Source: Octopus sinensis (Eukaryota). Taken from it: a stretch of DNA of 64,000 nucleotides. The stretch is from the NCBI RefSeq assembly GCF_006345805.1, contig NC_043002.1, forward strand, positions 90,148,001 to 90,212,000, written 5' to 3'. Below, in pieces: positions 10,612 through 58,685 of this stretch. The notes beneath the pieces are model-generated. The model worked only from the letters and a program-made list of their open reading frames with translations. It did no database searches and had not been told where the DNA came from. The translations under genes were made by a program, and so were the position numbers. Every line of letters begins with the position of its first letter. Position 1 is the stretch's first letter.

Positions 10612-10642
<31 letters not shown>

Positions 10643-23937: not shown

Positions 23938-26900
23938 TATTATATAACAGTAGACACAGGCATGGTGCAGGTGTAGCTGTATGTGGTAAGAAACTTGTTT
24001 CCGAATCATGTGGTCTTCGGTTCAGTCCCACTCTATGGCATCTAGATCAAATGTCTTCTAGTATTGCTCCAGACCTACATATGCTTTATGAGTGGATTTG
24101 GCTGACAGAAACTGAAAAGAAGGCTGTTGTGTATATGAATGTATGTAGATATATTTGTATGTACATGTATTTTATATGTATATATGTACGTATATATGTA
24201 TGTATATGTATGTACATATGTGTTTGTTTGCACAGAAACACACATGTGTACCATGTCTGCACATCATATAACAGTCGTAAATGAGCATCACCATCATACA
24301 AGCAAGGTTGTTAATTTCCAATTTTCTTTTAAAAGCATGCATTCCTAAAGAAAAAAATATTACCTTGCTTGGAAACAAGTGAGGATTGGTACGGGAAGAG
24401 CATCTGACCATAGTAAAATCTGCCTCAGTAATTTCCAGCTAAGCCTTATGAGCATGGGAAAATGAACATTAAAGGACAAAAGATTGTGATGTACTGTGGT
24501 TGTGAGGTTAAAAGTACTGAACTACTTATTCCATTGTTCTGAGTTCAATACTTACTACAACAGCTGTCTTCCATAACTGCAAGAATACCGTGTATACACA
24601 AAAAATCTATATTATTAAAATTAAAATTCAGAATGTTCTGGAAACAGCTAATATATAACATTTATATGATTCTGTTATCATTACATTGATAAATAGAGTG
24701 GCATTTTTGCTTTACTGATGATATCACAGAATATATATGGTACTCTATTGGTTATGATGACAAGAGTTCCAGTTGATCTGGTCAACAGAACAGCCAGCTC
24801 GTGAAATTAATGTGCAAGTGGCTGAGCACTCCACAGATACGTGTACCCTTAACGTAGTTCTCAGGGAGATTCAGCATGACACAGATTGTGACAAGGCTGG
24901 AACTTTGAAATACAGACACTACTCATTTTTGCCAGCTGAGTAGACTGGAGCAGCATGAAATAAAGTGTCTTGCTGAAGGACAGAATGCATCGCTGAGAGT
25001 TGAACTAACGACCTTACAATCGTGAGTTGAATACCCTAACCACTAAGCCATGCATCTTCATGATATCACAGTAATACTGACACATATCCAGATTTGTTTC
25101 CCATTCTTGACAAAAAATGTAAATGATATTAGTCAGTGATAAAGGTTTTTTTTCCTCACCACATTTTTTTCTGAACATTTGGTGTTTTAAAAATGCTTAT
25201 ACTAGCTAAACAGTGGTGCTATATGAAAGCCTGATCCAGTGTAGAGTTTTGGGCTAGGAGCAGAGAGAGACTTTGAAAGCCAGCTGTTTGGGGCAGTACA
25301 GTTAATTCTATATACCATATTCTACCTGTTATGAAGAATTTGTGTTAAATTTTCTGGAAATATTACCTGTGATAATGTAGTGTCCAGTCTGAGAGATTTG
25401 TGTCATTTTCCTAATATCAACAAGATGGATCTTAAGAGATAACTCTGAGGAACTCTGTGGGACATCACAGAACAAACAGTGGATAATGTAGTCCTTGATA
25501 TACTATAGCTGAATTAGAGTTGGGATGGTTATGGTTGAAATATGCCTGATCTTTAATGAGATCTTGGGCTAAATGATGACCACAACAACAACAGGTCTGT
25601 AGGATTTAGTAGATATTATTAAGCAAAGACAAATGAAGATGAGAAATTTTCTTTTCGTGACATCAGTATTGCCATTATTTATCACTAGAGGGCAGTTGTG
25701 TTGTAGGTGGTGGATGACTGTAAAACATGGGATCACTACTTGGTACCCCAACCTGTGAGGAATAGCAATGAAATCTCCCTAACATCATAAGACTACCATC
25801 TTAGGGAAAATGAAAGAATACATTGTATGATGTGTAATTCTTGATACACAGTATCTGAAAAATGTTACTATGGTCATGGCTGCAGTGCCTTTGATCATAG
25901 TTCAGCCTTATTGAGCTGACCAAGGGCTAAACAATTACCATTTGTATGCAAGTGATGAGTTTTTAGAAAGTTATTGTCTTTATTATTCTAACACCACCAT
26001 CACTGTTGTATATTGGCAGCATAATTACAGGTTTCAATTTTACATTATGATTTCAAATCCACTTATAAACGGCAATATAGAAATGAAAATCTTGCTAATT
26101 GCTTTCTAAATAGTCACTTCATAACTAAATGCTATATGTAAGCTTTGTTATTCAGATATTTTTCCCCATGTCTTTTAATTAAATTTCCATCTAGGAAACC
26201 AAATTTGTGAGCTGACTGATAATAATTATACATTTTATTTTATGAAACATCTCGCTATATTGTTGTATTCAAGATATGTTCTTCTATTAATGTTTTTAAA
26301 AAAAAAATCAATTATCATGCTAAATGCAAGTTTTCTTGTGGCATAATATCAAATGATCCTCTCAGCATTTGTCGGTTTACTGAGTGATTTTGAAGAGTGT
26401 ATGATATGGAATAGAGAGAGAGAGAGGCACACAACAATAATGGCCGACATTGGAGTTGACACTGTCGCTTGTGTAGGAAAGGTTTCTTTTAGAGTGGAAT
26501 AAGAGAAGAGAAAATGTGTAGTCAAAGAGAAAATAAAATAAATAGCTTGATGGTGCTGGGAATCTTCCCTAATTAAAAGGAAAACAAAAGTTGTCAGTGT
26601 GTGAAATGCTCTCAATTCAATTTAGGATAGTTTGCTGTTTAAACCAAAGATTGCGTAAAGAGATTTTGGTAAGGTATCAGTGTTCACACCGATCAATATT
26701 TTCAACAGGTATCTAAACTGACACAAGAAACTTTGGTTTCAACATTCTGGACAAACATTTTGTAGGAAAAAGGAAAAAAAGCAAAAAAAAAAAAATAATA
26801 ATAATAACAAAAAGCAAAAAAACAAAATTGTTTTAACCTTAACCAACTAACTAACCATATTCCAGAACCAAGGAGAGAGGACTGATACGAATAAAATGAC

Positions 26901-28130: not shown

Positions 28131-28884
28131 AAGGCATGTGGTTTAGTGGTGAGGGTATTCGGCTTGAAATTGTAAAGTCATGAATTTGATTTCCAGTAGT
28201 GCATTGTGTCCTTCAGCAAGACATTCTATTTCATGTTGCTCCAGTTCATTCAGCTGGCAAAAATGAGTTGTACCTGTATTTCAAAGAACCAAGCTTGTCA
28301 CATTCTGTGTCATGCTGAATCTCCCTGAGAACTACATTAAGGATACATGTGACTGCAGATGGCTTGGCCACTTGCACGTTAAGTTCATGAGGATCAATTG
28401 CACGTTAAATTCATGAGGATCAACAGGGTTGGATCAAATGGAACCCTCGTTGTCATAACCTATGGAGATCTAGTTAGAATGGGGCAATAAAAAATTGAAA
28501 GATGGGTTATTTAAGCTGGCCCAAATGGCAGAAGTAGGAGTAGACCAAAGAGTAAAATAGCTGGATAATATCTGTAGTCTCAGCTGGTCATGCTTGAGAA
28601 TCCAGCAGAAAAGTGTAATGATGGTTGCTCCTGATAGGTAACAAAAGGTAAAGTTACAGTCTCGAGTCATGCTGACTCATAAGGGCCAGTTTCCTGGTTT
28701 CATGGTGTGTAAACTCTCCACCTGGATGCAACACCCGACTGTTACAAGATTACTCATTTTTGCCAGCTGAGTGGTCAACAGCATGAAATGAAGTGTTTTT
28801 CTCAAGACCACCATGTATCATTTGATCCAGGAATTGAAACCACAATCTTACGATCACGAGTCCAACACCCTAACCACTAAGTCA

Positions 28885-36249: not shown

Positions 36250-38033
36250 AATTCTATAAAAATGATTTGGGAAGATCCCTCAATTGATTACATGCAAAGA
36301 ATGAAAAGTGATAGGGATTTAAACGACCCCTCCCCCATACACACTTCTCAGACTTTAGTGCCAAATAGTTACATGGACACAATAGCAAGCAACCTTTGCT
36401 GAGAAAAAATTTGCAGTTATCTCTATAGACCTATAAAATTGCAGAGTAAATAAGAGTCAGATCAGGTCAGTGAATTTTCCTCCTGAGAAAAACACAAGCA
36501 ATACAGATCATGACTATTGGGATAACAATAAAACTGAGATGAACCCTCTGCCATTACATGAGCAAGCAGTAATCAATTATGATGAAAGAGAAGTAATGAG
36601 TGTAGAATGTAAACAACTGAAAGTAAACACAATTAACAGCACTAATAAAGAATTCCATGAGAAAACAATTTCCACACAAATTGATAGAAAACCTTCCATC
36701 ATGGTGTTATCTGGGATGGATCAAGTAGCTAAGGGAGATCAAAATCCCATATTTTGGATATTGAATGTTCTTCTATTCTGTGCTGCAATTACCATTCACC
36801 TACAGATGTGGAGGTGCAATGGCCCAGTGGTTAGGGCAGTGGTTGGAGGATTGCGGTTTCAATTCCCAGACCGGGCATTGTGAGTGTTTATTGAGCGAAA
36901 ACACCTAAAGTTCCACGAGGCTCTGGCAGGAGATGGTGGTGAACCCTGCTGTACTCTTCCACCACAACTTTCTCTCACTCTTTCTTCCTGTTTCTGTTGT
37001 ACCTATATTTCAAGGGGCCAGACTTGTCACACTCTTTGTCTTTCCCTTGGATAACATCGGTGGAGTGGAGAGAGGAGACTGGTATGCGTGGGCGACTGCT
37101 GGTCTTCCATATACAACCTTGCCCAGACTTGTGTCTCGGAGGGTAACTTTCTAGGTGCAATTCCATGGTCATTCATGACCGAAGGAAGTCACAACAGATG
37201 TGAGTAACAAAGATCAATTTCACTGGGTAACATGATGTTTATCCTTGGGTAGCAACTGCTGTTTCCTATTTGCTTACTCCTAGAAAGCACAAAAAATGGT
37301 TAATACTTTCTTCAAACTTTGCTCATAATCAGAGATGCACATATTGTCCAGCCACTAAGGGACATGCTCTGTGGTATTGAGCAGAATATTTGCTATAACG
37401 ATATTTCTGCTTCAGCATCTCAGTGCTGAATCTGTCTGAAATGTAATGGAAAATAGGTCAGTTTGAAAACATTGATGTCCAGGTTACTGAAACAAAGTTT
37501 GAAAGGAATAGTAGTCATTTCCTTTGATTTGTAGGTAGAAACAAATAGGAAATAACACTTACTGACCAAAGACAAAAAAACAACAAAATAAATAAAAAAT
37601 TTTGTTACAGTGTTATGAAAAGAAACAGTCAAAATGGATTACCTCCCTTCAGTAAAATATTGACAGACTTTGAAAAAATATTTGACAGCTAGATGCTATC
37701 ATTAAGTGCAAAGTAAATGATAAATTCATGAATACCCAGTCTAAAATCTATGGTAACTGTCAACACAAGACACAAATGGGCAATCTAATCATGCTTAAAC
37801 ATTAACTGTGAGTAGTAAGTGAAAGTTTTTAATTGGTGCAGGCGTAGCTGTGTGGTAAGAAGCTTGTTTCCCAACCACATGGTTCTGGGTTCAGTTCCAC
37901 TGCATGACACCTTGGGCAGTTGTCTTCTACTATAGTCTTGGGCCAACTCAAGTGAGTGGATTTGGTTGACAGAAACTGGAAGAAGCCCACTGTATATATG
38001 TGTGTGTGTGCGTGCATGTGTGTGTGTGTGCGT

Positions 38034-38087
<54 letters not shown>

Positions 38088-39300
38088 CTGTGTGTGTGTG
38101 TGCCTGTGTGTGTCCTCGTTTGTATCCCACCACCGCTTGACAGCTGGTGCTGGTGTGTTTACATCCTCATAACTTACCACTCAACAAAAGAGTCCAATAG
38201 AATAAGTACCAGGAATTAACAAAAAAAAAAAAAGAAATATATATATATATATATAAGTACAGGGGTTGATACATTCGATTAAAAATTCTTAAAAGTGGTG
38301 CCCCAGCATAGCCACAATCTGAGGACTGAAACAGGTAAAATAAATAAAACAAAAGAAAGACTACTGTGATTGATGACTTTGCACTGAACCCACAAATGGT
38401 GTATTGGATCAAGGGCAATCTTCTTTTGTCTTAAATGAAAACTGTAAGGTTGTAAAAGCACCTCGTCAGAATAATCTACAGTCGTTTTAAAGAGGAATCT
38501 GGAATGTGAAAAAATAAGACAGCTGTAAGGTACTGTGGCTAGATGAGTCACATTCCATCACTGAGGATAATGTAGAACTATGTAAATGTCTGTCCTGAAA
38601 CTTATAATATCAACAGTAAAATTTTCTAGATGGTTGCTGCAAAACTATCAAATGAGAGAGATATGATAGTCAGTTATTAGTATATAAAGATCATATTCTA
38701 CAATTATAGCTCTTGGTAATCTGTTGTAAATAGCAATAAATGCTGAAATTTGTTTCTTTATTGCCCACAAGGGGCTAAATACAGAGGGAGCAAACAAAGG
38801 GATTAAGTCGATTGCATAACTGGTACTTATTTTATCGACCCTGAAAGGATGAAAGGTAAAGTCGACCTCGACAAAATTTGAACTCAGGACGTAAGAACAG
38901 ATGAAATACCGCTAAGCATTTCACTCGGCGTGCTAATGTTTCTGCCAAAATGCTGAAATTGATGTGTCAAACTTATTGGCAGTTGCATGTAAACACAAAT
39001 AGTTAAGATCCAGGAGATACATATGGCCTAAAAATACAGGCCCATAGTGTACTTGAACGTGATATATATGAATTATACATAAGTTGCTTGAAAGCATTTC
39101 CCCAAGATCACAGTGAAACGCATGAGATAATTGAAGAGCAGGCAGGAGGGAAGAACGTGGGCTAGAGTTGTTGAACAGTTCCTTCTTGACAAAGTTGTCC
39201 TTAAGGAAACAAGGCAACACTGCCAAATCTTCTGACTCTATGGCTTGATTACATGAAGCTGTTTGACTCTGTTCCTTACTCATGGAAAATAGAATTACTA
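36250..39300 (+). mobile_element. Fragmented R4/Dong-like LINE (N-terminal region through RT), interrupted by SINEs
   Basis: IDYMQRMK..HFSDFSAK near 36280-36380; VKAPRQNNLQSF*RGIWNV at ~38453; PKN-RPI-CLNVIY pattern at ~39027; IIEEQAGGK and LWLDYMKLFDSVPYSW (WxDYxKAFDSVPHSW) at 39128-39285. Joining these into one element is inference. Confidence 0.75.
36811..37193 (+). mobile_element. tRNA-derived SINE with 9-bp TSD, inserted in the LINE relic
   Basis: GAGGTGCAATGGCCCAGTGG head; TSD ACAGATGTG at 36802-36810 and 37194-37202. Confidence 0.9.
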
Positions 39301-40127
39301 TGCTTTGCATGCATACTTACATGCATGCATACAAAACCAAATGTGAAAGCCAACTTCAATGTCTTTGAAATAATAAATAATATATTTGTATTAGCATTTT
39401 GTTAACAAATTTTATTTTAAATTTGATGATATAGAGCTTCAATTTATCACCTGAACTTAGAAGTTATTATGTAGTTATATCACATACAAAATTGGATAGT
39501 AAGTTTCTATCTTCATGTCTTCTTAGGATGACAAATTGACACATTTCTATCAAATTTTACCTCTAAACTTGATTGCTGTTTGAGATTCTACCCCACCCCC
39601 GCCCCATGACCGCATATATTTGAGATTAACTACTATCACCTCTTGTAAAGGTTTGATATTTCTTATGCATGATATCCATTAAAATTTCGGTATTTCTTAT
39701 ATGGGATATTTATAAAAATATTCACACTGTTTCTGAAGATAAAATTCTATATACTCTTTGATCTTCCCTTCTTAAATAGTTTTCTGAAAGCAGAATGATC
39801 CTATAAACACACATCGAGCTTATCAGTTAGTGCTGACCTCAATCACTTCCACTGAATGTCTTTACTTACATATTCAAACACAAACTGTCTCTGATCAACA
39901 CTGATAAAGAAAAAAAATCTACAAATAATATATTGATTTCTGTCAGTGTAAAATGTTTTAGTACCTACCAGCTAATACTGTATGCCTGCCTTTATGGCAC
40001 CAATCTTTCTAATCTAGTGTTTCATCTGAAGTTGAGATGAAGCTCACGTGCTCTTTTTTTGCATGCCACCTATTTTTCTGTAGATCACACTATGTGTGTG
40101 TGTGTGAATGAGTATGTGTGTGTGTGT

Positions 40128-40200
<73 letters not shown>

Positions 40201-40204
<4 letters not shown>

Positions 40205-40355
40205 CTCTCCTTGTTTTTTCTGTGTCCCTTTCTGTAGAAGAGCATAGGCTCGAAGCATAAAAGACTTTTTCTATTCCTGAGCGCTATACTAATACACCTG
40301 TTTGTTTTGTACACCACCTGTCTTCGTCTTTTGTTTTTTTCGTAAACTCTCCCTA
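40201..40355 (+). mobile_element. (TA)n-flanked element carrying a hammerhead-like fold (copy 2)
   Basis: Homologous to 17340-17518; CTTT-CTGTAGA-A-GAGC(ATAG)GCTC-GAAGCATA-AAAG. Confidence 0.7.
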
Positions 40356-41975
40356 TATATATATATATATATATATATCATTAACACTTAATGCCTGTTT
40401 TCCATGTTGGCATGGGTTGGATGGCTTGACAGGAACTGGCAAGACCAGAGGCTGCACCAGGTTCCATAGTTTGTTTTGGCATAGTTTCTATAGCTGGATG
40501 CCTTTTATGTGGCACCAGCATCAAACATATATATGTATATATATAAAATTCTTCTCTATCATTTCACCAATTCCACCAATACCAGTTATCGAACCGTTCC
40601 AGTTTTATTTTATTGGTTCTTGGTAGAGTTAAAGTTAATTTACCTTTGGCATTAAGTGACCTCTTAAATTGTCCTCGACATTAAGTGAACTCTTACATTG
40701 TCCTTGACGTAAAGTAAACTCTTAACAGTAAAGATCTCCTTACAACTATAAACCAGTTGACATTTGTATTGTTTTACATATTGAAAGTTTTAGATGAATC
40801 ATTTCATATATTTTCACTAATTGCTAATTTATATCTTTTTTCTTTCTTTTTTTTTCTACATTACAGGTGAGTACTCACATTTAGTGTAGTAGGTGTGCAG
40901 TTACAGGTAAAGTGTCAATTTATAAATAACTAACTACACTCATCATCATCATCATTATCATCATCGTTGTTGTTGTTGTTGTCCTTATCATTGCCATCAT
41001 TGGCAACAACTGCAACATCATTTATAGCTTGATTTATTTTGAGTTCTTCAATTAAAAATGAATTATTCCATATTGTCTTGGAGTTCTTCTATGATATAAC
41101 AGACTTAGCTGTGTGGTAAGAAGCTTGCTTCCCAACCACATGGTTCTGGGTTCAGTCCCACTGTGTAACACCTTGGGCAAGTGTCTTTTACTATAGCCTT
41201 GGGCTGACCAAAGCCTTGTGGGTGGATTTGGTAGGTAGAAAATAAAAGAAGCCTATTTATCTATCTATCTATGTGTGTGTATCTTTGGATCTTTGTATGT
41301 CTCCTACCACTGCTTGACAACTTGTGTTGGTTTGTTTACGTCCTTGTAACTTAACAGTTCAACAAAGAGAGACTGATAGAGTAAGTGTCAGGCTTTAAAA
41401 AAATGTAATTACTGGGGTTGATTCATTTGACTAAAAGATCTTCAAAGCAATGCCACAACATGGCTGCAGTCTAATGACTGAAACAGATAAAAGATAACAT
41501 ACAATTCTTGCTAGTGAGAACAAACTTCTAAAATGGAATATTTCGGTCCAATAATAGAAAGTCTTTTGTGTTAACAGAAGATGAGGGTTTGTATCCTACA
41601 AGCTGCTAAATTGCACACATCATCGTACACATAATAGTGAAAATCAAAATAATGATGTAAACAACACATTTGTTACAGATAGAAACAATTGTCCCCATCT
41701 GGCTCCAGAGTTCTGAGGAGGGACAACCATATTGAAATACAGGTGTCAGAGTTTGCTGATGTAACTGGAGCAAATGTGTTGTTTACACACATCATTTAAA
41801 AGGAGAAATCATTCTCTAATGATAATCTAACACTGAAAAGCTTTGTTCATGTTCACATCTGCTAGAATGTTTTAAGAATGAATATACATGAAGGCGTATA
41901 CACCTTATAGAAATTAATGGATGAGATGAAAAACATTAATGTAATCAAGTATTTATATTATTTTAGTTTTTCTAA

Positions 41976-42053
41976 CAAGCATTGCAAGAAATTATGGACA
42001 TGTTTCAGTATTATTCTTACCTCATCAGCAAAACACAGTTTGCAATACACTTG
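41976..42053 (-). ncRNA. Type I hammerhead ribozyme motif with intact catalytic core
   Basis: Minus strand: GTATTGCAA-ACTGT-GTTTTG-CTGATGA-GGTA(AGAATAA)TACT-GAAA-C-AT-GTC|CATAAT-TTC-TTGCAATGC. All core nucleotides present; palindromic ACATGT helix III; predicted cleavage after C at 41997. Confidence 0.8.
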
Positions 42054-42559
42054 CTGAGTTAGTGAAGAAGGAATCAGTAAGTAAATACAGGTGCATGCAT
42101 GACTGGGATTAGAAGCTTTTTTCCCAAATATTTGATCTTGGGTTTAATCCCACTGCAGGGTAACTTAGGCAAGTGTTTTCTACTATAGCCCAAAAGTGAC
42201 CATAGCCTTGTGATTAGATTTGTTAGAAGGAAACCAAAAAAAGCCTGTTGTGTGTGTGTGTGCGCGTGTGTATATATATATTTGCATGCTTCCTACAGCA
42301 TTATGAGTATTTTAACTCTTATTTCTAGCAATGTAGGTGTCTTGGCAGCCTTAGTCACATTTAGTGAAGGTTGAATTTTTCCTTTATGGTATTGCATTGC
42401 ACTTAACTGTTTATATGTGTGTGTGTCTATATATTGGTGTATTTATGTCCCATAACTTCACAGTTTAGCAAAAGACACCGATAGAATTCTTTTATTCTTT
42501 TATTCTGTTACTGGGGCCATGCTGCAGCACTGCCTTTTAAAAAAGATAAATGATACTAC

Positions 42560-42668
42560 TGCCTGTGAACTTGAACTCACAACCTCTGCTTATTTTCTGA
42601 CTTATGAATTAACACTAGGAAGATACTGTCTATTAGTATGATGCGCTAACTGATTGGGCCACCAGGGC
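42560..42668 (-). pseudogene. Intron-containing tRNA-Ile pseudogene (pre-tRNA-Ile(UAU)-like)
   Basis: Minus: GCCCTGG TG GCCCAATCAGTTAGCGC A TCATA CTAATA [~37-nt insert starting GACAGT] ...GCAG AGGTT GTGAG TTCAAGT TCAC. Aligns to the metazoan tRNA-Ile(UAU) GCTCCAGTGGCGCAATCGGTTAGCGCGCGGTACTTATA-intron-ATGCCGAGGTTGTGAGTTCGA; stems are decayed. Confidence 0.8.
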
Positions 42669-43711
42669 AGACTATGTACCAGGTTTCAAAATAAGAAATA
42701 ACTAAATACTAGGGCTGATTCATTTGATTGAAAAATTCTTCAAGACAATTCCCCACCATGGCCACAGTCTAATGATTGAAACAAGTAAAAGATAAAAGAT
42801 AAAAAAAAAGAAAAAAAATCCACTGTGAAGTTAGTGTTGCAGTTGCGGTTAGTGTTATGTATTCGGTATAAGGAATTGTAATTATCTTAACCAGAAATTA
42901 ACATGTGTAAAAATATTTGTTTTGACAACACTAGCCAATGTTTGTAATTTGAAGCTCATTGCAGTCCCTGATAGCAAGCAAAGCAAGAAGGATAAGAAAG
43001 TGGTGGTGGTGGTGGTGGTGGTGGAAAGTAGGTGTGGAATATTAAACAGCAAAAGCAACAACAACAACAACAACAACAACAATGACAACATGAATGGTGT
43101 ATAGAAGGTAGAAAACTAAAGTAAACCATTGTCTTGAAATAATCTTTTCTGTCATTTACCAATATGAAATGGGGGGAAAACTATTGGAGGGTAAAACGTT
43201 AGGAATATTTATGGAACATAATTGTAATAATAGAATATTCTTGTAACAATAGAATATTGCAAAAAATAGTAGATCGCTCGTCATCATCATCATCATCATT
43301 GTTGTCATCAATATCAACACATAATTTGAAGTTACAGGTTCAATGGTAAAGCATCTGTTTATGGTAAGTAAGAGTAGTAGAAAATTACTGGAATACAATA
43401 TTGTTGGATATGAAACACCATTATCGGAATACCAGAACATTTTCAGAGATTCCAAGGGAACTGGGCAAGATTTACCAGCCAGCTGAAGACACTATTATAA
43501 GCACATTCTTTTCTTTTTATTCTTGCTTTTACTAGTTTCACTTACTGGTTAGTTTGTGGTCATGCTGGAGCACTGCCTTTTTTTGTTTTAATTGATTGAA
43601 TCAAAGCCTGGTATTTATCTAAGTCTGTAACTTATTCCACCATACTCCCTTTTTGCTGAATTGGTAAGCAGCAGAGATATAAACAAACACACACAGACAT
43701 ACACCTATGTA

Positions 43712-43740
<29 letters not shown>

Positions 43741-43742
<2 letters not shown>

Positions 43743-44026
43743 CAATGATTAAGGGTAAAATCAATTAATTATTAATTAATTTCACCAAGTAAGTGTTCAG
43801 TATGTAAAAGGACCATTCAAGGTGTATTCAAAATATTACGTTATTGAGCCCTAATTATTTTACTGAGCCCTAATTATATAATATATATATATATCAATGA
43901 TTAAGGGTAAAATCAATTAATTATTAATTAATTTCACCAAGTAAGTGTTCAGTATGTAAAAGGACCATTCAAGGTGTATTCAAAATATTACGTTATTGAG
44001 CCCTAATTATTTTACTGAGCCCTAAT

Positions 44027-44032
<6 letters not shown>
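43741..44032. repeat. Tandem duplication, period 152 bp, separated by (TA)n
   Basis: ATCAATGATTAAGGG...GAGCCCTAATTATA at 43741 and 43893; no differences seen by eye. Confidence 0.95.
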
Positions 44033-44058
<26 letters not shown>

Positions 44059-45508
44059 ATAATAAATATTAGGGAATAAATCCAAACTTACAGGGAAAAA
44101 TCAGATTTAGGATTGAATCCAATTTTATAGTAAAATATTATATTATATTAAATTAGAGACAAAACCACTATTATGCAAATCAAACAACTCTACTACTCAA
44201 AGATGTGATGAAAAGAAGACATGAAACGATCGTAGTGGATATTAATAATTGTTAAATTTATAAATAATATAAATTAATTTATGTATTGGATTAAGTCTTT
44301 CTTTGTTTGATTTCATAATAGTGGTTTTGTCTCTAATTTAATATAATTTATATATATATATATATATTTATACATATTGAAATCAAATTCGATGACAGGC
44401 ATCCGTGCTAGTGGAGCGCTAAGAGCACCATCCGAGTGTGATCATTGCCAGAGCAGCTAACTGCCAGAGCAGCTAACAGTGGAACATAAAAAGCACCATT
44501 TGAGTGTGATCGTTACCAGCATCGCCTTACTGGCACATGAAAAAACATTTGAACAAGGTTGTTGCCAGTGCCGTTGGACTGGCTCCTGTGCAGGAGGCAT
44601 GTAAAAAAAACACCATTTAAGCATGGCCATTGCTAGTACAGCCTGATTGGCCCTTGTTCCGGTGGCACGTAAAAGCACCCACTACACTCTCAGAGTCGTT
44701 GGCATTAGGAAGGGCATCCAGCTGTAGAAACTCTGCCAGATCAAGACTGGAGCCTGTTGCAGTCATCTGGTTCACCAGTCCTCAGTCAAATCGTCCAACC
44801 CATGCTAGCATGGAAAGCGGATGTTAAATGATGATGATGATGATATATATATATATGTTATGTGAGTGTGCGTGTGTGTATGTATATATATATGTTATAT
44901 AAGTGTGTGTGTGTGTGTGTGCATATATATATATATATATAAATGCATACACACACACACGCACACACATATATATATATATATATATACTAGGTGAATA
45001 GCCTATCGTTGCCAGGCAATTTTTACAATAGAATGTCTTCCCTGACAGATAGGCCTCTAAATCAGGACAGATTTGTGAAGTTTTAACCAAAAAACTTCAT
45101 TGAGGATTTATTTCCTTTTTAAATTACTTACATGTCCATTCGACCATTTCACATGACTTTATTTATTAAGACTTCAGAAGTTCTTACAACTTTGGTTGTC
45201 ATAATGCTTTGCATTTGTTTGTTTAATAAAAATTCCTCCTGCTGATTTTGCTTTCATTACATGATAGACAACTTTCATGCAGAAAATGCCAGATTCCAAA
45301 TCTTGTTTTCTGATTAAGTAAAATTGATTAAACTTTAAACCTTAGTAATATTTTTCTGGAACAAATAAATAACAAAATTGAATTTAACATGGAAAATTAT
45401 TTCAATATACCAAATTTGAAAATTTTGATGTAATTTTAAAATCTCATAATATGTGATAGCAACAGGGAAAACCCTACAAAAGTAGAGAGACAGACAGTTA
45501 TAGAATGT

Positions 45509-45581
<73 letters not shown>

Positions 45582-45753
45582 ACACACATTTAGAAATGTA
45601 CACAAATGTAATCACGAGTTTAAAATGGTGTATAGTAGACATATGTATGTATGTACGTATGCTTGTATGTATATATAGGAGTGTGTGTGTTTATCTGTGT
45701 GTGAGTGTTTCTTTGCAATGGACAGCAGAAAAGCTACATATTCCTCACACCCC

Positions 45754-45793
<40 letters not shown>

Positions 45794-46184
45794 CTATGTA
45801 TTTATGAAAGAATGTATGCAGTGTCATGTGTATATGACAGCTGTAGTAACATTATCATCCCATTCTCACCGCAGCTCTCGCTTTCAGTGATATAAGTCAC
45901 CCTCTTTCTGTTCTACCTTTCCCTCAGACTAATACTTCTTGCAACCTTCTCATTTTATCATATAATTCACCCAATGCCCCTGGGCGGCATATAATAAATT
46001 TTTATTAAAATCCAATTAACCTATTATTGAACTGGATATTAATGTAACATGTATGCAAAGTTTTGTGAATAGTGGTTTGCTGGTTTAGGCCCTAAGATGG
46101 TAACAGGCAGAAAGACAGATAGAAATTGCCATTTATATATATATATATATATATAATATATATATATATATTAATAGTTAACAC

Positions 46185-46383
46185 CAAGCTAACATGGCAG
46201 TCCAGATAAATAGGATGAATGCTGCCGTTGATTAGCTCCAAGAGGCCATCGCCTCTAGCTAGCTATGTGACACACAAACCTGTGTCCATTATAACTTTCG
46301 AACAGGGGAGGTCAGCAGCTTTCCCTTGCTGGTCTGGCATCCACAGACTAGTTTCAAGGTGTTTGCCTCTTATGAATGTGGAG
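46185..46383 (-). mobile_element. ~200-bp (TA)n-flanked element with a decayed hammerhead fold
   Basis: GC-richer block between (TA)n runs; minus strand TCCACA-TTCATAA-GAGG(CAAACA)CCTT-GAAA-C-TA-GTC-TGTGGA. Confidence 0.7.
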
Positions 46384-46454
<71 letters not shown>

Positions 46455-46526
46455 TTATATATATATACATACACTCACATAAATATATACATATATATAT
46501 GTGTGTGAATATATATCAATTATTTA

Positions 46527-46593
<67 letters not shown>

Positions 46594-48379
46594 TACATAC
46601 ATACATACATGCACACAAACATATATACATGCATGTACATGTGTGTGAGTATAGAAAGAAATAGATTGCTAGATAATATGCATAGTCTTGGTTACTTTTG
46701 AGAATCCTGCTGTTAAGTGTTAGGATGGTTGGTTTTGATAGGACTCCATGGAAGAGGTGCTTTAGTTCTCTGCATGACCATCTCTGTAATAGTGGCTGGA
46801 GAAAATGGATTGATACGTATGTATGTATGTATGTATGTATGTATGTAGTCTGGTGGGTCAAGATACAGGTTTCCAGTAGCAGAGGGCATACTGAACATTC
46901 TGGTCAGGGTTAAATATTCTGTGGAGGCTCAAAAAATGTTTTGCTGGTGGTACTCCAGCATAGCCACAGCCTTAGAGCTAATACTTATAAAAGAATATAT
47001 GTATGTGAGTGTGTGTGTGTGTGCCTGTGTGTGTGTGTGTGTGCATGTGTGTATGTGTGTGTTTGCATACAGGAAGCTTTTTTGATAGTTTCCTTCAGCC
47101 AAATTCACTGACATGGCATTGGTCAACTCAGTCCTATAGTAGAAGACACTGGTCTAAGTTGCACTGGACCCAAAGAAACATGGTTGCACAGTCATGTATG
47201 CGCTGTCTCTTTGCCCGATTAAGCAAGAATACCTGTTGATTACTTATGTAACCTTGGATTGAAATATAACCTTCTGTTGAAGTATGGCTGTGGATTGAAA
47301 GTATGGTTTGGTTTTGAAATCCCAATCTCTGATGAGGGAGCTTCAATGTGATCATGTAAAGTGTGGTAATTAGTTGAGAATGTATATTACTGTCGTTGTT
47401 TACGCCCTGATCAAGTAGACCTATAAAGAGGTGCTGGAAATTTTCTGGCTTCCGGTAAAAGAAAATACAGGAGTATCAGTTGATTATGAATTTATTCAAC
47501 ACATTCCCCTCTCATTGCAGCAGAACTTCAGTTTTTCTAACCTATGTGAAAGAATACGGAAAGGTGAGCCTCCAACCAGGCCTTTCAGAACATCCTTAAA
47601 TCCCCCTTATACAATCAAAGACATCCGAGCCATGACCATTTCAACATTGCTCAATCAGTATATCTAGGAACGCATAACCAAATATGTTATTCCTGGTTTA
47701 AGACGGTAGAATTTAACTTGAAGGAGATTCGGCTGCTATTTCTAGCAAATCGAAAGACTCTATAAAGATACCTGTACCTTTGTTGGCTCCTCCTGTGTAA
47801 TTGAGCACAACAGTGTTACCATGAGTAAACTAATGGAAGCATATATGTACATATATATAAGTAACTTTTACTGTAAAAATAATGGAACAAAATAGATTTC
47901 TTCAGACATATCAGCTTCCTCATCTGCCAAACATCAGATTTTCTCTTGCATGAAATATATTAACTCTGCAAACATTTCCCAGATTACAGATCCTGTATTT
48001 ATTTATTTTATTTTACCGTATATTTTTTCTACTGTTATGTTAGATATAGTTGTTGTTGTTACTATTGTTGATGTTGCCGGAGATAGATGCAGTTATTGCA
48101 CTTGTTAGTCTGTTTTGTTTTTTTTTTGATGTTTTTTTTTTTAAGGTTGCATGTATAAATTTAGTTTCACTTCCTCCTCCTCCTCCTCCTCCTCCTCACT
48201 CCATCTCTTGTTCCATGGCCACATGCCTTCCTCCTGAATGCATCAGAAATATTCCAGATAATTCTATCATCATTTCAAAGGAACTTAAAAGACCAAAATT
48301 ATTGCATTTACTTTGATCGCCAGACTTATGCTAGACAGCACAACACAAGTGAGAAATACAATGTAATATATATTGTGTG

Positions 48380-48416
<37 letters not shown>

Positions 48417-50433
48417 TATGTGTGTGTGTACTTTGGATAGGAACTTTCCAGGTGCAGAAATCCATGCTCAGTCATGACCACACAAAGATCTATAATGTAT
48501 TAGAATACATAAGATAATGTATAATGTATAAGATTTTATATAGCAGGCTTGGCTATGTGGTAAGAAGCTTGCTTTCCAACCACATGGTTCTGAGTTCAGT
48601 CCCATTGCATGGCACTTTGGGTAAGTGTTTTTTTTCTACTACACCCTCTGATTGACCGAAGGCTTGTGAGTTTAACACAAAATTTCACATTAGCTCTTTG
48701 TTCCAACTTATTGTACATGACAAAAATAGCAGACTACAGCATACATGTGATCACAAAAACACAAATTTCACAACCTGCAAAGTAAACACAGTGATGTCGC
48801 TTGGCTCACTGATAGCTCTCACTGCACATGCAACTGTGTGCTGCCATCTGTTGTCATGCTACAAAAGTAGTCCAGGAACTTTTTGATACAAACTGCAGAC
48901 ACAAATATGCACACGCTCATACACATAATTGTAATAGTTAGTATTTGATTAAACATGCAGCATATGTATTTTAGACGCACACACTTACATACACTATTTT
49001 TTTTTACTTGTTTCAGTCATTAGGCTGTGGCCATGCTGGGGCACCGCCTTGAAGAACTCTAGTCAAACAAATCATCATCATCATCATCATTCTTTAACGT
49101 CTGTTTTCCATGCTAGCATGGATCGGATGGTTCGACCGTGTTCTGGGAAGCCAGGAGGCTGCACCAGGCTCCAGTCTGATCTAGTAGTGTTTCTACAGCT
49201 GGATGCCCTTCCTAACGCCAACCACTCTGTGAGTGTAGTGGGTGCTTTTTACGTGCCACCGGGGCCAGGGCCCAGAGGAGGCTGGCAAACGGCTCAACCC
49301 AGTATTTACTATTTTTAAAGCCTGGTGCTTATTCTATTGTTCCCTTTTGCCGCCCTGCTCAGTGAGAGGAATGTAAACAAACCAACACCGGTTGTCAAAG
49401 CAGTGGTGCAGGACAAACACACTCACACACAATGGGCTTCTTTCAGTTTCTATCTACCAAATCCACTCACAAGGCTTTGGTCGACCCGAGGCTATAGTAG
49501 AAGACACTTGCCCAAAGTGCCATGCAATGGAACTGAACCTGGAACCATATGGTTTGGAAGCAAGCCTCTTACCACATAGCCACACATGTCTTTACAGCTC
49601 TTTGGTATGGTTCATGGACAGTTACATGATACATTTGTTCATTGTGCTTTTGACTATAAACAGCTGTTGCTTGGAAAGCAGGGCTTGGTTGTATGGTAGT
49701 TTAGTACTACTCTACTGTAGTACAACAGATGTTAGTTGCATTCTTACCAAGCAGAACCTTTCCAGTTTCAATAAACTTCCCTGGTAAAAAAAAAAAAAAA
49801 AAAAAAAAAGCAACAACAACAACAAAACAAAATAAATGAACAAACAAACAAACATTTAAATACATAAATTCTGCCTATTGAAAATAAACATTACATGCAT
49901 TCACATGCCTTCAAGTAGATGTATCCCTCTCTCTCTCTCTCTCTCTTACTCACACACATACACACACACACACACACAATCATATTTGCACATAAGGGAT
50001 AATTGATGTTGGTTGGTTTATTTTTAGGAGGTTGGAGAGAGAGAGAGAGTGGGGGAGAAGTGCTCTGTTATTCTATATTCTTCCTGCCCTCCTTCATCTC
50101 TACTAAAATAATCTATGTCTGATGTTGTCCAAATACTTTTAGTCAGAACACTAAGATTGATAACCTTGTGTATATTACAAATAACAGTGTCTTGTGTAAG
50201 TGGTTTCCTTCATGTTGATGGCCGAGGGCAATGTTTTTTAAAGGTATTGTCAGTGCATGCGCTTGTTAGGGTCCCACAGGTGTAAGATCATCAACGTTAC
50301 AAGTTTATTATCTGATGTTTAATGCTAACACATTATAAACTTAAAGCATTGATGGGATGAAAATATACTTCTGAGAGATCTGGAATATAAACACACAATG
50401 ATACAGATCATAATGCTTTATACATACATACAT

Positions 50434-50471
<38 letters not shown>

Positions 50472-50506
50472 GTTTGTGTGTCTGTGTGTATATATGTATA
50501 TATATG

Positions 50507-50537
<31 letters not shown>

Positions 50538-51331
50538 ATATATATGTATATATATATATGCATTTCAATAAACATATCTGTATATGTTTATTGAAAATAA
50601 ATATTTAAAAGCCTAGAGCAAATGCATTAGATTGCTCATATATTGTTACGCCAAATTTTATTTCAATATAAATTATATTTTGATATAGCTTAGTTTTGTT
50701 GTTATTGGTTTGTTGCATGCTAAAAACATTTCCATGGAATTCATGAAAATTACATCTGAAGGCAACTGACTTTTAGTTTTCTCAGAGAAAATTCGGTTAG
50801 TCATAGATACAAGCTGCCCAGTGAGAATTCTGAACAGACATTTCAAGTTTTATCAATATACGACAAGAGACGCAATTGTTTGTCTACGGCACTCAGAATG
50901 GCTTGCTGACCTTCGGACAATCATTTCAGTGGGGAGTTTATACAGCACTTGGGAATTGAGTGGATGAGGAAGAGAGGTACTGTATGGAAATGAATATGAA
51001 AGGAAATCTATCTAACACACACACACACACACACACACATGCACATCCACCCATATATACACACAAATATACATATATTTTGGCATATTAAAAACATGAC
51101 TTTATTCAAGTTTTGCCTGTATATTTTTTTATGGACCATATGTGTATTTATATGTATACATTATCATATTCATTGTTTTACATCCACTCCTCTGTATTAC
51201 CAATAACTGGGTGGGTTGTTTGAGGCAGTTTTTTATGGTATATTGCTTCCTTAATGCCATCCCTTTTAGATGCCTCTTATGATATGAAAGGATATAGAAT
51301 ACTGCGTATATTCTACAATCAGAATTCATGC

Positions 51332-54038: not shown

Positions 54039-54690
54039 TAAATTACAAGCTTTCATTACATTTGTACAGAATACTCAGTATCTGCAAAGGAAATATTCTA
54101 TAATATTGACTGAGATACACTTAAAATGACAAGATGGTCTTGGATGGAATGTCTTTCATCATAGGTCAGCATGGCAAAAGACTGACCAAAGGCAAAATTA
54201 GTAACTTCTTAATTGTTTAATTTTTAAAGATGGCCAGAAATTTTCCATGAAACAGAATAGAATGTTGATTATAAGAGTTTCAAGTAATGAAGGCCACTAC
54301 TTCTCTAATGACAAATGCAAGTCCTTTGCTGAACAACTGATTCTCTCAAACGTTGATCAAGAACTTTGGAAGATCTTCTCTTCCTCCTCCTCCTCTTCAT
54401 CATCATCATCATACCCTTCTCCTTCTTCTCCACCTTCTCCCCTCTCCAACAATTGATTGATTGTTTATATTGAATGAAGACAGGGACAAATCAATACCTT
54501 ATCCTTGCAATGTCCATCTACTTACCTACATATGCATACTTATTTATCAATAAATACATACACACACACATAATATATATATATGTATAAATGCATACAT
54601 ATATATGTGTACTTAGAAATGTATCTAAGTGTGTGTACAGACATATGTATATATATAATATATATATACGTATATATATATATATATATA

Positions 54691-54727
<37 letters not shown>

Positions 54728-54760
54728 CATATATATATACACACACATATATATATATAT

Positions 54761-54830
<70 letters not shown>

Positions 54831-55776
54831 ATATATATATGTGTTTGTGTGTATGTGTCTGTGTATGCATGTGTTTATATACAATAGAGTAAGTATGTGT
54901 ATATAAACAAATTCATAGATTTATTCTCTAGCTTTCTCTCTCTCTCTCTCTCTCACACACACAAACACACACTATCTCTCTCTCTCTCGCTCTTGTACAC
55001 AAATACATGCACACACACACAAACACATACTTTTGTTCTGTCTTTGAAGACGATGTCCTGGCTGGATTTAATACATTCAGTACATATTTGGTGAGTCTTC
55101 AGGAAAGGCACTGGCATTGCAGTGTTTACATATTTCATGTAGGATTAAGGAAACACACCGCTAAATGAAGACTTGTGCACACAGTCAATGATGATGACGA
55201 CGATGAGGATGATGATGATGACGACGACAACGACAGCAGTGCCCTTGAACAAGTTTAGTTGTTCTCTGTAACCATTAATGGCCTTGACTAAGCAAAGATG
55301 ATTGGATTCATCCATAAATGTATATTATTTGCTTTTGTTATTGTTGGTGGTTCTGTTGGTGATCTTACAACCGTTGCCATCAAGATTGTTATTGTTGTTA
55401 ACTTGCTGTTTACCATTATTATTACGATCAGTTCTGTTAAGCTATTTCTGATGTCTTTATTACTATTCACTCAATTCTACTATCCACTTGATTAAGTCTT
55501 TGCAGGATTTAGATTCTTCCATACTGCTGATGGTGGAGAAAATACCATTTTATATGCTGCTTCATGGACAGGAAATCTTAGTTAAATAGAGAGTGGTGGT
55601 GGTGGTGGTTGGGAGGGGGAAGTATGTGAGTAAGTGTGTGTGTTGTCATGTGTCCTTTATTGTGTGTGTGTGTTTGTTGGTGTATATAAATTCTACATTG
55701 AAGTAATTCAGCCTATCATTGATTTATATATGTGTGTGCATGTATATGTAAGCATATATGTATATATATGTGTGTG

Positions 55777-55824
<48 letters not shown>

Positions 55825-55885
55825 TATGTAATATATATATATATATATATACTCACATACACATATATAATATATACATATCTCA

Positions 55886-55917
<32 letters not shown>

Positions 55918-56479
55918 CATCATCATCATTTAATGTCTGCTTTCCATGCTAGCATGGGTCAGACGATTTGACTGAAGTCTGGCAAACCAGATGGCTGCAC
56001 CAGACTCCAATCTGATCTGGTAGAGTTTCTACTGCTGGATGCTCTTGCTAATGCCAACCACTCCCAGAGTGTAGTGAGTGCTTTTACATGCCACTGGCAC
56101 GAGGGCCAGTCAGGCGGTATGGCAGGTCAGGCAGTACTGGCAGGTCAGGCGGTACTGGCAGACATACTGAACTACAAAAGAAATGTCACACTGTAAAAAA
56201 TTATTTTTTTCACACATGATATTGAAATTGTATGGATTTTATCACATTTCTTGGTAATTTAACATCAGGAAGATGTCACTGATCCACAACGCCACTCTCT
56301 TTCAAAAGCACAAGGATTGCATTTAGTGTTCAAACTTGATCACTTTTCATGAACATGGCAATGCTCATGAATGCATCTTTATGAAAAGTTTGATGCATAT
56401 GCAAGAAGTTGACTCATTGGGTATAAAAGACACTCAAATTTACCATCCTGTCATTGTCATTTCTTTCCTGAATGTAGCA

Positions 56480-58310: not shown

Positions 58311-58685
58311 GGAGGTGCAATGGCCCAGTGGTTTGGGCAGCGGACTCGCGGTCGTAGGATCGCGGTTTCGATTCCCAGACCAGGCGTTGTGAGTGTTTAT
58401 TGAGTGAAAACACCTAAAGCTCCACGAGGCTCCGGCAGGGGATGGTGGTGATCCCTGCTGTACTCTTTCACCACAACTTTCTCTCACTCTTACTTCCTGT
58501 TTCTGTTGTACCTGTATTTCAAAGGGCTGGCCTTGTCACTCTCTGTGTCACGCTGAATATCCCCGAGGGTACACGTGTTTGTGGAGTGCTCAGCCACTTA
58601 CACGTTAATTTCACGAGCAGGCTGTTCCGTTGGTCGGATCAACCGGAACCCTTGTCGTCGGAACCGATGGAGTGCTTCCACTTCC
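58311..58685 (+). mobile_element. Young tRNA-derived SINE inserted in (TATG)n
   Basis: GGAGGTGCAATGGCCCAGTGG head as at 36811, but a different 3' tail (GTCACGCTGAAT...CACGTTAATTTCACGAGCAGG); many CpGs retained. Confidence 0.9.

What the first reader, a model, noticed from the sequence alone, without database searches (positions are those of the whole stretch)
41976..42053. Intact-core type I hammerhead ribozyme with a long extended helix I in unique sequence
Seen: CUGAUGA, a 4-bp helix II (GGUA/UACU, with a G.U at the 10.1-11.1 position), GAAA, a palindromic ACAUGU helix III and a GUC cleavage triplet. Helix I is GUUUUG/CAUAAU (one U-U mismatch), then an internal loop (ACUGU/UUC), a 9-bp helix GUAUUGCAA/UUGCAAUGC and a further CAAG/CUUG. 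Established: minimal type I hammerheads whose helix III forms through a palindrome between two copies occur in Penelope-like elements and metazoan non-LTR retrozymes, and helix I internal loops contact loop II in natural hammerheads. Inference: this copy lies in non-microsatellite sequence and keeps every core base, so it may still cleave, or be selected, within a minus-strand transcript.
Basis: partly seen in the sequence, partly recalled or inferred. Interest (0 to 1): 0.82.

Follow-up and report, generated by a model that had tools for sequence, protein, structure and literature searches.

The report
Hammerhead look-alike inside an old repeat
The sequence does spell out a textbook hammerhead-ribozyme shape, but it lies in a decayed copy of a short old repeat whose only other copy has lost that shape, and no test run here supports a working or selected ribozyme, so it is most likely ordinary.

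Summary
The motif is on the minus strand at 42053→41976, as described. It has CUGAUGA, a 4-bp helix II, GAAA, ACAUGU, GUC with C17 at 41997, a 6-position helix I with one U·U, an internal loop and a 9-bp closing stem. Two details are wrong. The C of "CUUG" is already used by the 9-bp stem. The sequence is also not unique: it sits in a ~170-220-bp interspersed repeat (Y) with a second copy at 24667-24729 + 25072-25172, split by a SINE insertion with a 12-bp target duplication. That copy keeps CUGAUGA but has GACA for GAAA, no helix II and no palindrome.

Rfam gives no hit at gathering score; the best match is HH9 at 18.4 bits against 52. A descriptor matches about 2e-4 to 2.5e-3 random 64-kb windows, or tens per large genome. 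Predicted pairing is weak: helix I 0.02-0.03 and helix II 0.26, against 0.92 and 0.99 for the HH9 consensus. I found no second copy that keeps the hammerhead features (so no cis partner for dimeric cleavage) and no Penelope-like ORF.

Verdict: most likely a non-functional look-alike (~0.48). It could be a dead relic of a hammerhead-bearing retroelement (~0.37). An active ribozyme is unlikely (~0.07). Low interest.

The parts
41976..42053 (-). Hammerhead-like motif in type I layout. Outer CAA/UUG 42053-42051 / 41978-41976. Closing stem 42048-42040 / 41987-41979. Internal loop 42039-42035 / 41990-41988. Helix I 42034-42029 / 41996-41991. CUGAUGA 42028-42022. Helix II plus loop 42021-42007. GAA 42006-42004. 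ACAUGU 42003-41998. C17 41997.
   Evidence: Direct reading. It is the only descriptor hit in the window. HH9 scores 18.4 bits against a gathering score of 52.
41909..42076 (-). Copy Y1 of a short old interspersed repeat ('Y') that contains the motif. The profile alignment reaches 41882-42098.
   Evidence: blastn gives 48.3 bits against the 25-kb copy, and 0 of 200 shuffled queries reach that score. After the SINE is removed, 108 of 169 positions are identical, 58.3 bits. nhmmer profile search.
24667..24729 (+). Copy Y2, 5' part. It holds CUGAUGA at 24715-24721, in the same alignment column as the candidate's box.
   Evidence: Colinear alignment across the SINE insertion. The 48 nt upstream of the box are 26/48 identical in a fixed register, empirical p = 7e-5.
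25072..25172 (+). Copy Y2, 3' part. It reads UAAUACU GACA CAUAUC CAGAUU...: GAAA has become GACA and ACAUGU has become ACAUAU. The helix II 5' strand UAUC (24722-24725, in the 5' part) no longer pairs with UACU.
24730..25059 (-). tRNA-derived SINE ('X') inserted into Y2. It is flanked by the 12-bp target-site duplication ATGATATCACAG (24718-24729 and 25060-25071).
   Evidence: Sequence reading. Seven further copies of X lie in the window.
42090..42818 (+). Abundant SINE-like repeat next to the motif. It has a tRNA-like head, an internal (TG)n(TA)n tract and an A-rich tail. A second copy at 41119-41504 lies on the other side of the 41505-42089 segment that holds Y1.

Best explanation
The 78 nt are a hammerhead look-alike, not a working or selected ribozyme. 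They lie in one of two diverged copies (about 64% identical) of a short (~170-220 bp), AT-rich, old interspersed repeat. This copy happens to carry every hammerhead core base together with weak, AU-rich pairings in the right places.

Shown: membership in the repeat; loss of the core and of helix II in the sister copy; failure of the curated covariance models; no second copy in the window that keeps the hammerhead features.

Inferred: no self-cleavage. As a monomer, helix III is one base pair. The hammerhead helices I and II are predicted to be minor conformers.

The shared scaffold (CUGAUGA, 15 nt, GA.A, CAU.UC) was already in the repeat's founder. I judge that resemblance not demonstrably more than coincidence.
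For: - Rfam: 0 hits at gathering score. No hammerhead hit at E<=10 in a 651-nt search. HH9 reaches only 18.4 bits against 52 when just 101 nt are searched. No hammerhead is among the best 150 of 206 sub-threshold hits in the whole window.
- Chance rates: about 2e-4 to 2.5e-3 per 64 kb, which means tens of such motifs per Gb-scale genome.
- Paralogue: Y2 keeps only 13 of 22 pairs, has 1 of 4 helix II pairs, and carries A14->C. The covariation measures are reached by 128 of 500 shuffles.
- G10.1.U11.1 replaces the G-C pair that PMC4209133 lists as a mark of non-random motifs. U11.1 is shared by both copies, so it is probably ancestral.
- Folding: the hammerhead fold is -7.6 kcal/mol against an MFE of -12.1. 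Pair probabilities are 0.02-0.03 for helix I and 0.26 for helix II. The double-hammerhead dimer is -18.6 against a dimer MFE of -32.0. The HH9 consensus control gives 0.92 and 0.99. Fold z-scores are 0.19 for the motif and -0.17 for the whole repeat.
- No tandem array. No further Y copies. No Pfam domain in the six-frame translation of 39600-44400.
Against: - For one given window the full architecture is improbable by chance: about 1e-3, and about 1e-5 if the 9-bp closing stem is counted.
- The layout copies the canonical metazoan type I design in detail (PMC4209133, PMC7229834).
- The motif sits in an interspersed repeat of retrozyme-like size.
- Core positions are more alike between the two copies (12/13) than the other positions (40/65; Fisher p = 0.027).
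- If the window is cephalopod, as I suspect, such genomes are rich in Penelope-like elements (PMC13282606, PMC8967140).
- Nearest-neighbour folding ignores tertiary contacts. A weak 10.1-11.1 pair also occurs in a genuine abundant hammerhead, axolotl HHR_Amex2, which has U.U there (PMC7229834).
Confidence: 0.48

Rival explanations
1. Dead relic of a real hammerhead. On this view repeat Y descends from a retroelement that carried a type I hammerhead, either a non-LTR retrozyme or the flanking repeat of a Penelope-like element. That ribozyme once cut multimeric transcripts into units. Both copies in the window are now decaying neutrally, and Y1 still has an intact core by luck.
For: - Full canonical layout, including the internal loop and closing stem (PMC4209133).
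- Membership of a short interspersed repeat whose two copies share CUGAUGA and the spacing to GA.A.
- The core is better conserved than the rest: 12/13 against 40/65, p = 0.027.
- Two compensatory pairs in the closing stem (U.G->G.U and C-G->G-C).
- The per-window chance rate is only about 1e-3.
- PMC4209133 reports that most such motifs occur as single copies, probably related to truncated elements.
- Penelope-like elements are abundant in coleoid cephalopods (PMC13282606, PMC8967140).
Against: - The ancestral base at 11.1 is U, not C.
- Helix II is absent in Y2, with no compensating change.
- The helices are AU-rich and weak.
- There is no tandem arrangement.
- No RT or GIY-YIG remnant was detected. 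This is weak evidence, because transposase-like fragments picked out by eye also reached only E of about 0.1 in Pfam.
- The whole repeat has no stable rod-like fold.
- The covariance-model score is at noise level.
- Only two copies are available, so there is no real covariation test.
Confidence: 0.37
2. One reading: a still active or selected type I hammerhead. It would cleave a minus-strand transcript after C41997, pairing with a second RNA molecule through the ACAUGU palindrome.
For: All 13 core bases are intact, the triplet is GUC, and there is a 6-bp palindrome for dimerisation plus a long closing stem that is predicted to form (pair probabilities 0.70-0.96).
Against: - No second copy in the window keeps the hammerhead features, so cis dimerisation is not possible; the only paralogue has lost them.
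- The ACAUGU duplex alone is only -4.6 kcal/mol, and the double-hammerhead fold is 13 kcal/mol above the dimer MFE.
- Helix I pair probability is 0.02-0.03.
- The 10.1-11.1 pair is G.U.
- The paralogue is not conserved.
- There is no covariance-model support.
- Even genuine minimal Penelope-type hammerheads cleave poorly in vitro (PMC4209133).
Confidence: 0.07
3. The boxes belong to something else. One option is a plus-strand micro-exon at 42029-42076, with acceptor ...cctcatcag| and donor |gtaagt. The other is a C/D-box snoRNA-like element, with UGAUGA as the C box and CUGA as the D box.
For: TCATCAG, the reverse complement of CUGAUGA, ends a pyrimidine-rich tract. GTAAGT follows 48 nt later, and the frame between them is open. 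UGAUGA and CUGA are both present, with weak snoRNA model hits of 17.3 and 12.3 bits.
Against: Splice-like hexamers are common in 36% GC DNA, and no protein family matches. The snoRNA scores are far below their gathering scores (40 and 37). The C-to-D spacing of 13 nt is too short for a guide region, and the boxes are not next to the terminal stem.
Confidence: 0.03

Closest known systems
Canonical metazoan type I hammerheads of non-LTR retrozymes and satellite repeats (newt/axolotl HHR_Amex1, Schistosoma and mussel families; PMC7229834, PMC4209133)
   Same: The core bases are the same. Helix I has 6 positions, then an internal loop and a closing stem. Helix II is 4 bp with a 6-7-nt A-rich loop. 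Helix III is a single A-U pair capped by a palindromic tetraloop, which implies action as a dimer. The triplet is GUC and the context is low in GC.
   Different: The candidate is not in a tandem array. The 10.1-11.1 pair is G.U rather than G-C. Helices I and II are AU-rich with a U.U mismatch. The loop bases differ from the HH9 consensus (UUAC/UAC against ACUGU/UUC here). There is no family of copies with covariation, and the one paralogue has lost the motif.
Rfam Hammerhead_HH9 (RF02275), the best-scoring curated model
   Same: The order and sizes of the elements are the same; the model aligns end to end (positions 1-77).
   Different: The score is 18.4 bits against a gathering score of 52. 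The helix sequences are unrelated, and helix III is deleted down to 1 bp. HH9 is an intronic element conserved in amniotes, and no conservation is shown here.
Minimal hammerheads in the flanking repeats of Penelope-like elements (PMC4209133)
   Same: Both are type I, both have a palindromic helix III region that implies dimers, and both are mostly found as scattered single, decayed copies.
   Different: Penelope-type minimal motifs have a long helix II (6-8 bp), a short helix I (4-5 bp) and an extra base between A9 and 10.1. None of these is present here. No RT/GIY-YIG ORF or second flanking copy was found.
C/D-box snoRNAs
   Same: UGAUGA and CUGA boxes lie inside a terminal stem.
   Different: The boxes are 13 nt apart and far from the stem. 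Model scores are well below threshold.

Membership tests
Hammerhead ribozyme (Rfam clan CL00010) | Invariant core C3 U4 G5 A6 N7 G8 A9, G12 A13 A14, A15.1-U16.1, H17 | tested here: met
   All are present at 42028-42022, 42006-42003 and 41998-41997.
Hammerhead ribozyme (Rfam clan CL00010) | Three helices around the core that can actually form | tested here: inconclusive
   On paper helix I has 5 of 6 positions paired, helix II has 4 bp and helix III has 1 bp plus a palindrome. Predicted pair probabilities are 0.02-0.03 for helix I and 0.26 for helix II. The HH9 consensus gives 0.92 and 0.99. Tertiary contacts are not modelled.
Hammerhead ribozyme (Rfam clan CL00010) | Score at or above a family's gathering threshold | tested here: not met
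   0 hits at gathering score. The best is HH9 at 18.4 bits against 52.
Hammerhead ribozyme (Rfam clan CL00010) | G10.1-C11.1 pair, listed as highly conserved in PMC4209133 | tested here: not met
   The pair is G.U. U11.1 is also present in the paralogue.
Hammerhead ribozyme (Rfam clan CL00010) | Related copies keep the core and show compensatory changes in the helices | tested here: not met
   The one homologue has A14->C, 1 of 4 helix II pairs and 13 of 22 pairs overall. The covariation measures are reached by 128 of 500 shuffles. With only two sequences the test has low power.
Hammerhead ribozyme (Rfam clan CL00010) | Site-specific Mg2+-dependent self-cleavage | not testable with these tools
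   This needs in vitro transcription of monomer and dimer constructs.
Metazoan non-LTR retrozyme | Tandem repeats of ~170-400 bp, each with a type I hammerhead | tested here: not met
   TRF finds no array at 41.5-42.1 kb. Only two dispersed copies exist, in opposite orientation and 17 kb apart. The unit size (~170-220 bp) is compatible.
Metazoan non-LTR retrozyme | Expressed as small circular RNAs | not testable with these tools
   No transcriptome data are available. The whole-repeat fold has z = -0.17.
Penelope-like element flanking-repeat hammerhead | Adjacent RT plus GIY-YIG ORF and a second hammerhead in the other flanking repeat | tested here: inconclusive
   Pfam finds nothing in the six frames of 39600-44400 or in the three plus-strand frames of 37900-39599. 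Transposase-like fragments picked out by eye also scored only E of about 0.1, so sensitivity is low. No second motif lies on the same strand.
Penelope-like element flanking-repeat hammerhead | Minimal-motif traits: helix II 6-8 bp, helix I 4-5 bp, an extra base between A9 and 10.1 | tested here: not met
   Helix II is 4 bp, helix I has 6 positions, and there is no bulged base.
C/D-box snoRNA | C and D boxes next to a terminal stem, a guide-length spacer, and a model score above threshold | tested here: not met
   snoR128 scores 17.3 against 40 and SNORD10 scores 12.3 against 37. The boxes are 13 nt apart.

The most novel reading that the evidence does not exclude
Repeat Y could be an undescribed family of short, non-autonomous, retrozyme-like elements, probably in a cephalopod. 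Its type I hammerhead would tolerate a G.U pair at 10.1-11.1 and carry an unusually long closing stem. The copy at 41976-42053 would still self-cleave when two transcripts pair through ACAUGU.
Probability: 0.06. Interest if true: 0.5.

Novelty: not a real feature. Interest (0 to 1): 0.15.

Why it matters
As it stands the finding matters little. Type I hammerheads and their decayed copies are already known in very large numbers in animal genomes. This one fails the tests that separate real families from pattern matches.

Its use is as a caution. In AT-rich, repeat-rich genomes a perfect core with plausible helices appears by chance tens of times per genome. A sensitive search for diverged paralogues can change the picture.

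If repeat Y did turn out to be a hammerhead family, it would add a further molluscan group to the known spread of retrozyme and Penelope-type ribozymes. That would be a modest extension, not a new principle.

Tried and rejected
- **Rfam scans.** I ran four: gathering score on the whole window, E-value mode on 651 nt, on 101 nt and on the whole window. Only the 101-nt search shows any hammerhead hit, and it is far below threshold.
- **C/D snoRNA reading.** Rejected on scores and geometry.
- **Penelope-like ORF search.** Pfam on X-masked translations (six frames of 39600-44400, the three plus-strand frames of 37900-39599) found nothing. Sensitivity on such fragments is poor. The six frames of 44401-47700 were only inspected by eye.
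- **Public collections.** Two patterns were searched in metagenome contigs and viral contigs: the motif itself, and the block shared by both copies. There were no matches. No eukaryotic genome collection was available, so orthologous loci and genome-wide copy number could not be examined.
- **Source organism.** Three window ORFs looked up with the look-up of encoding contigs were not on record. The cephalopod assignment rests on my memory of an octopus SINE and on the repeat profile, and is unverified.
- **Extent of homology.** I looked for Y1-Y2 homology beyond the repeat, including past the neighbouring SINE. There is none, so this is an interspersed repeat, not a segmental duplication.
- **More Y copies.** An nhmmer profile search found none.
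- **CpG-decay idea.** I considered that U11.1 arose from C11.1 by CpG decay in this copy. It is weakened because the paralogue also has U there.
- **Rod-like fold.** A retrozyme-style fold of the whole repeat was not found.

Full report
**1. The observation**

The minus strand from 42053 to 41976 reads CAA GU GUAUUGCAA ACUGU GUUUUG CUGAUGA GGUA AGAAUAA UACU GAA ACAUGU C CAUAAU UUC UUGCAAUGC UUG.
- All 13 invariant core positions are present.
- Helix II is GGUA/UACU, with G.U at 10.1-11.1.
- Helix I is GUUUUG/CAUAAU: five pairs, one U.U, and a terminal G.U.
- After a 5/3-nt internal loop comes a perfect 9-bp stem.

One detail is wrong. The C of the proposed 'CUUG' is the C that closes the 9-bp stem, so the outer extension is only CAA/UUG after a GU bulge.

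The layout is what Cervera & de la Pena 2014 (PMC4209133) call the canonical metazoan type I hammerhead: helix I 6 bp, helix II 4 bp, and helix III 1-2 bp capped by a small palindromic loop. The 2020 retrozyme paper (PMC7229834) describes the same one-pair helix III with a palindromic tetraloop in the axolotl family HHR_Amex1.

**2. Is it more than chance?**

The window has 10 CUGAUGA sites on both strands, most of them inside ATG microsatellites. I wrote a descriptor with these rules:
- an exact CUGAUGA box;
- a contiguous helix II of at least 4 bp;
- GAAA;
- helix III either a perfect palindrome or a hairpin;
- H17;
- helix I with at least 5 of 6 positions paired.

It finds only this site in the window, and it hits 1 of 400 dinucleotide shuffles of the window. 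With the core planted in a first-order Markov background, 22 of 400,000 trials pass, and 7 of those have a palindromic helix III. At 10-12 cores per window that is about 2e-4 to 7e-4 per 64 kb.

The Rfam E-value agrees. HH9 gives E = 0.015 for 101 nt and 4227 families. That is about 2e-3 per 64 kb for this one family, and roughly a hundred hits per 2.7 Gb.

A closing stem of 9 bp or more, with loops of 8 nt or less, occurs at 1.3-2.7% of random positions.

So the motif is improbable in a single window. Tens of such core-plus-helices matches are still expected by chance in a Gb-scale genome. Which source dominates depends on how many true hammerheads this genome holds, and I could not measure that.

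**3. Curated models**

Rfam at gathering score finds nothing in the window. In E-value mode on 651 nt no hammerhead family appears at E <= 10. Only when the search is cut to 101 nt does HH9 (RF02275) appear, at 18.4 bits against a gathering score of 52. It aligns end to end, but helix III is deleted and the helix sequences are unrelated. In the whole-window E-value run, 206 sub-threshold hits appear. The best 150 are all microsatellite-driven 'miRNA' and similar noise, with no hammerhead among them.

**4. Folding**

- The 78-mer's minimum free energy is -12.1 kcal/mol, with z = 0.19 against shuffles.
- The hammerhead secondary structure evaluates to -7.6 kcal/mol.
- In the ensemble the closing stem forms (0.70-0.96), but helix I has probability 0.02-0.03 and helix II 0.26.
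- A competing pairing of GUGUUU with GAAACAU, or of UUUUGCU with GGUAAGA, buries the core.
- The domain-swapped double hammerhead that a palindromic helix III implies is -18.6 kcal/mol, against -32.0 for the best dimer. The ACAUGU duplex alone is worth -4.6.
- As a control, the HH9 consensus printed by Rfam gives helix I 0.92, helix II 0.99 and closing stem 0.97.

Nearest-neighbour models ignore tertiary contacts, so this argues against activity but does not exclude it.

**5. The sequence is not unique**

Standard blastn of 41500-42600 against the window found only the neighbouring SINE. A more sensitive search (word size 7, +1/-1 scoring) matched 41909-42025 to 25172-25060 on the opposite strand: 67% identity and 48.3 bits. 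None of 200 dinucleotide-shuffled queries exceeded 39.7 bits.

At the 25-kb site a tRNA-derived SINE occupies 24730-25059. It is flanked by a perfect 12-bp target-site duplication, ATGATATCACAG. When the SINE and one duplicate are removed, the alignment continues colinearly across the junction: 108 of 169 positions identical, 58.3 bits.

As an independent check, the 48 nt upstream of CUGAUGA are 26/48 identical in the predetermined register. Only 7e-5 of all 48-mers in the window reach that level.

Homology stops there on both sides, even when I look past the adjacent SINE. A profile search finds no third copy. So the motif lies in copy Y1 (about 42076-41909) of a short interspersed repeat. 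Copy Y2 is 24667-24729 + 25072-25172.

**6. What the paralogue says**

Y2 has CUGAUGA in the same column (24715-24721), the same 15-nt spacing, UAAUACUGA, ACAU and UCCA. It differs in these ways:
- GACA replaces GAAA (A14->C);
- ACAUAU replaces the palindrome;
- UAUC replaces GGUA, so only 1 of 4 helix II pairs survives;
- A replaces G at 2.1.

Overall, 13 of the 22 pairs survive in Y2. Two pairs in the closing stem change on both sides. The covariation measures are reached by 128 of 500 shuffles.

This retention is what two sequences 64-67% identical would show with no selection for structure. U11.1 is shared, so the G.U pair is probably ancestral rather than a recent CpG decay.

One hint points the other way. 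Core positions are 12/13 identical, against 40/65 for the rest (Fisher p = 0.027). This is one of several comparisons I could have made, so it is weak.

The whole 217-nt repeat has no unusual fold (z = -0.17).

**7. Context**

- The motif is bracketed by two plus-strand copies of an abundant SINE-like repeat (41119-41504 and 42090-818). That repeat has 11 head copies in the window.
- No tandem array covers the site.
- Pfam finds no domain in six-frame translations of 39600-44400, or in the three plus-strand frames of 37900-39599.
- That negative result is weak. Fragments that look like mariner/Tc1 transposase by eye also reached only E of about 0.1.
- No eukaryotic genome collection was available. 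Pattern scans of the metagenome and viral collections, and ORF look-ups, found nothing.
- From memory, the main SINE resembles the abundant octopus SINE.
- The 36% GC, the extreme microsatellite load, the SINE density and the Tc1/mariner remnants fit published octopus repeat profiles. Those profiles also list Penelope-like elements as a major class (PMC13282606, PMC8967140).
- This assignment is unverified.

**8. Interpretation**

The claims of uniqueness and of likely activity or selection are not supported. The third, cleavage, cannot be tested here.

I weigh the explanations as follows:
- a non-functional look-alike carried by an old repeat: about 0.48;
- a dead relic of a repeat family that really carried a hammerhead (retrozyme or Penelope-type): about 0.37;
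- an active or selected ribozyme: about 0.07;
- other readings (plus-strand micro-exon, C/D snoRNA): about 0.03.

The first two differ only in what the founder of repeat Y was. A genome-wide census of Y copies would settle that. Several defining features were tested and not met: the gathering score, G10.1-C11.1, a family with covariation, and a tandem or Penelope context. I therefore do not file it as a hammerhead family member. Either way the novelty and interest are low.

Noticed in passing
window 42090-42818 (+), 41119-41504 (+), and heads at 6578, 15108, 20884, 21088, 37858, 47076, 49435, 52485, 60584: An abundant SINE-like repeat with a tRNA-like head (GGGTTTAATCCCACTGC), an internal (TG)n(TA)n tract and an A-rich tail. 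The window has 11 head copies. ARAGORN calls no tRNA. From memory it resembles the common octopus SINE, which suggests a cephalopod source.
   Followed up: partly
window 24730-25059 (-), plus 4136-4274, 5454-5597, 16572-16709, 28139-28391, 28751-28884, 58512-58673, 59562-59623: A second family of tRNA-derived SINEs. The copy at 24730-25059 has a clean 12-bp target-site duplication, ATGATATCACAG, and interrupts the paralogue of the candidate.
   Followed up: yes
window 42029-42076 (+): On the plus strand, ...ttcttacctcatcag|CAAAAC...GGAATCA|gtaagt forms a 48-nt open frame with splice-like borders. The acceptor TCATCAG is the reverse complement of the CUGAUGA box. No protein family match; probably coincidence.
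   Followed up: partly
window 452-661, 3148-3444, 57109-57330 (+): Stop-free stretches that read like Tc1/mariner transposase C-termini (for example ...HPPYSPDIAPSDFHLF...). Pfam support is only weak (DDE_3 E = 0.12, rve E = 0.19).
   Followed up: partly
window 39238-39285 (+): The peptide LWLDYMKLFDSVPYSW looks like the motif-A region of a LINE-type reverse transcriptase. There is no Pfam hit. It is on the opposite strand to the candidate and 2.7 kb away.
   Followed up: partly
window 43729-44032: A 152-bp tandem duplication in AT-rich sequence, next to TA microsatellites: two copies that are 100% identical ungapped in the repeat search, and 98% matches for TRF's wider 43722-44047 array.
   Followed up: no
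whole window, e.g. 17226-17331, 44876-44990, 46384-46634, 50420-50559, 54643-54885, 55725-55881: Very high microsatellite density (103 TRF rows). It produces about 200 sub-threshold Rfam 'miRNA' matches (mir-297, mir-466, mir-3149, mir-5014). These are TG/TA repeat artefacts.
   Followed up: yes
window 10583-10978, 44460-44681, 49000-49315, 55962-56193 and others: A recurring repeat whose translation reads ...FHASMGWT.RPGSGKP..CTRLQSDLA.FLQLDALPNANHSVSVVGAFYVPPA... appears many times on both strands. It is another interspersed family and was not classified.
   Followed up: no
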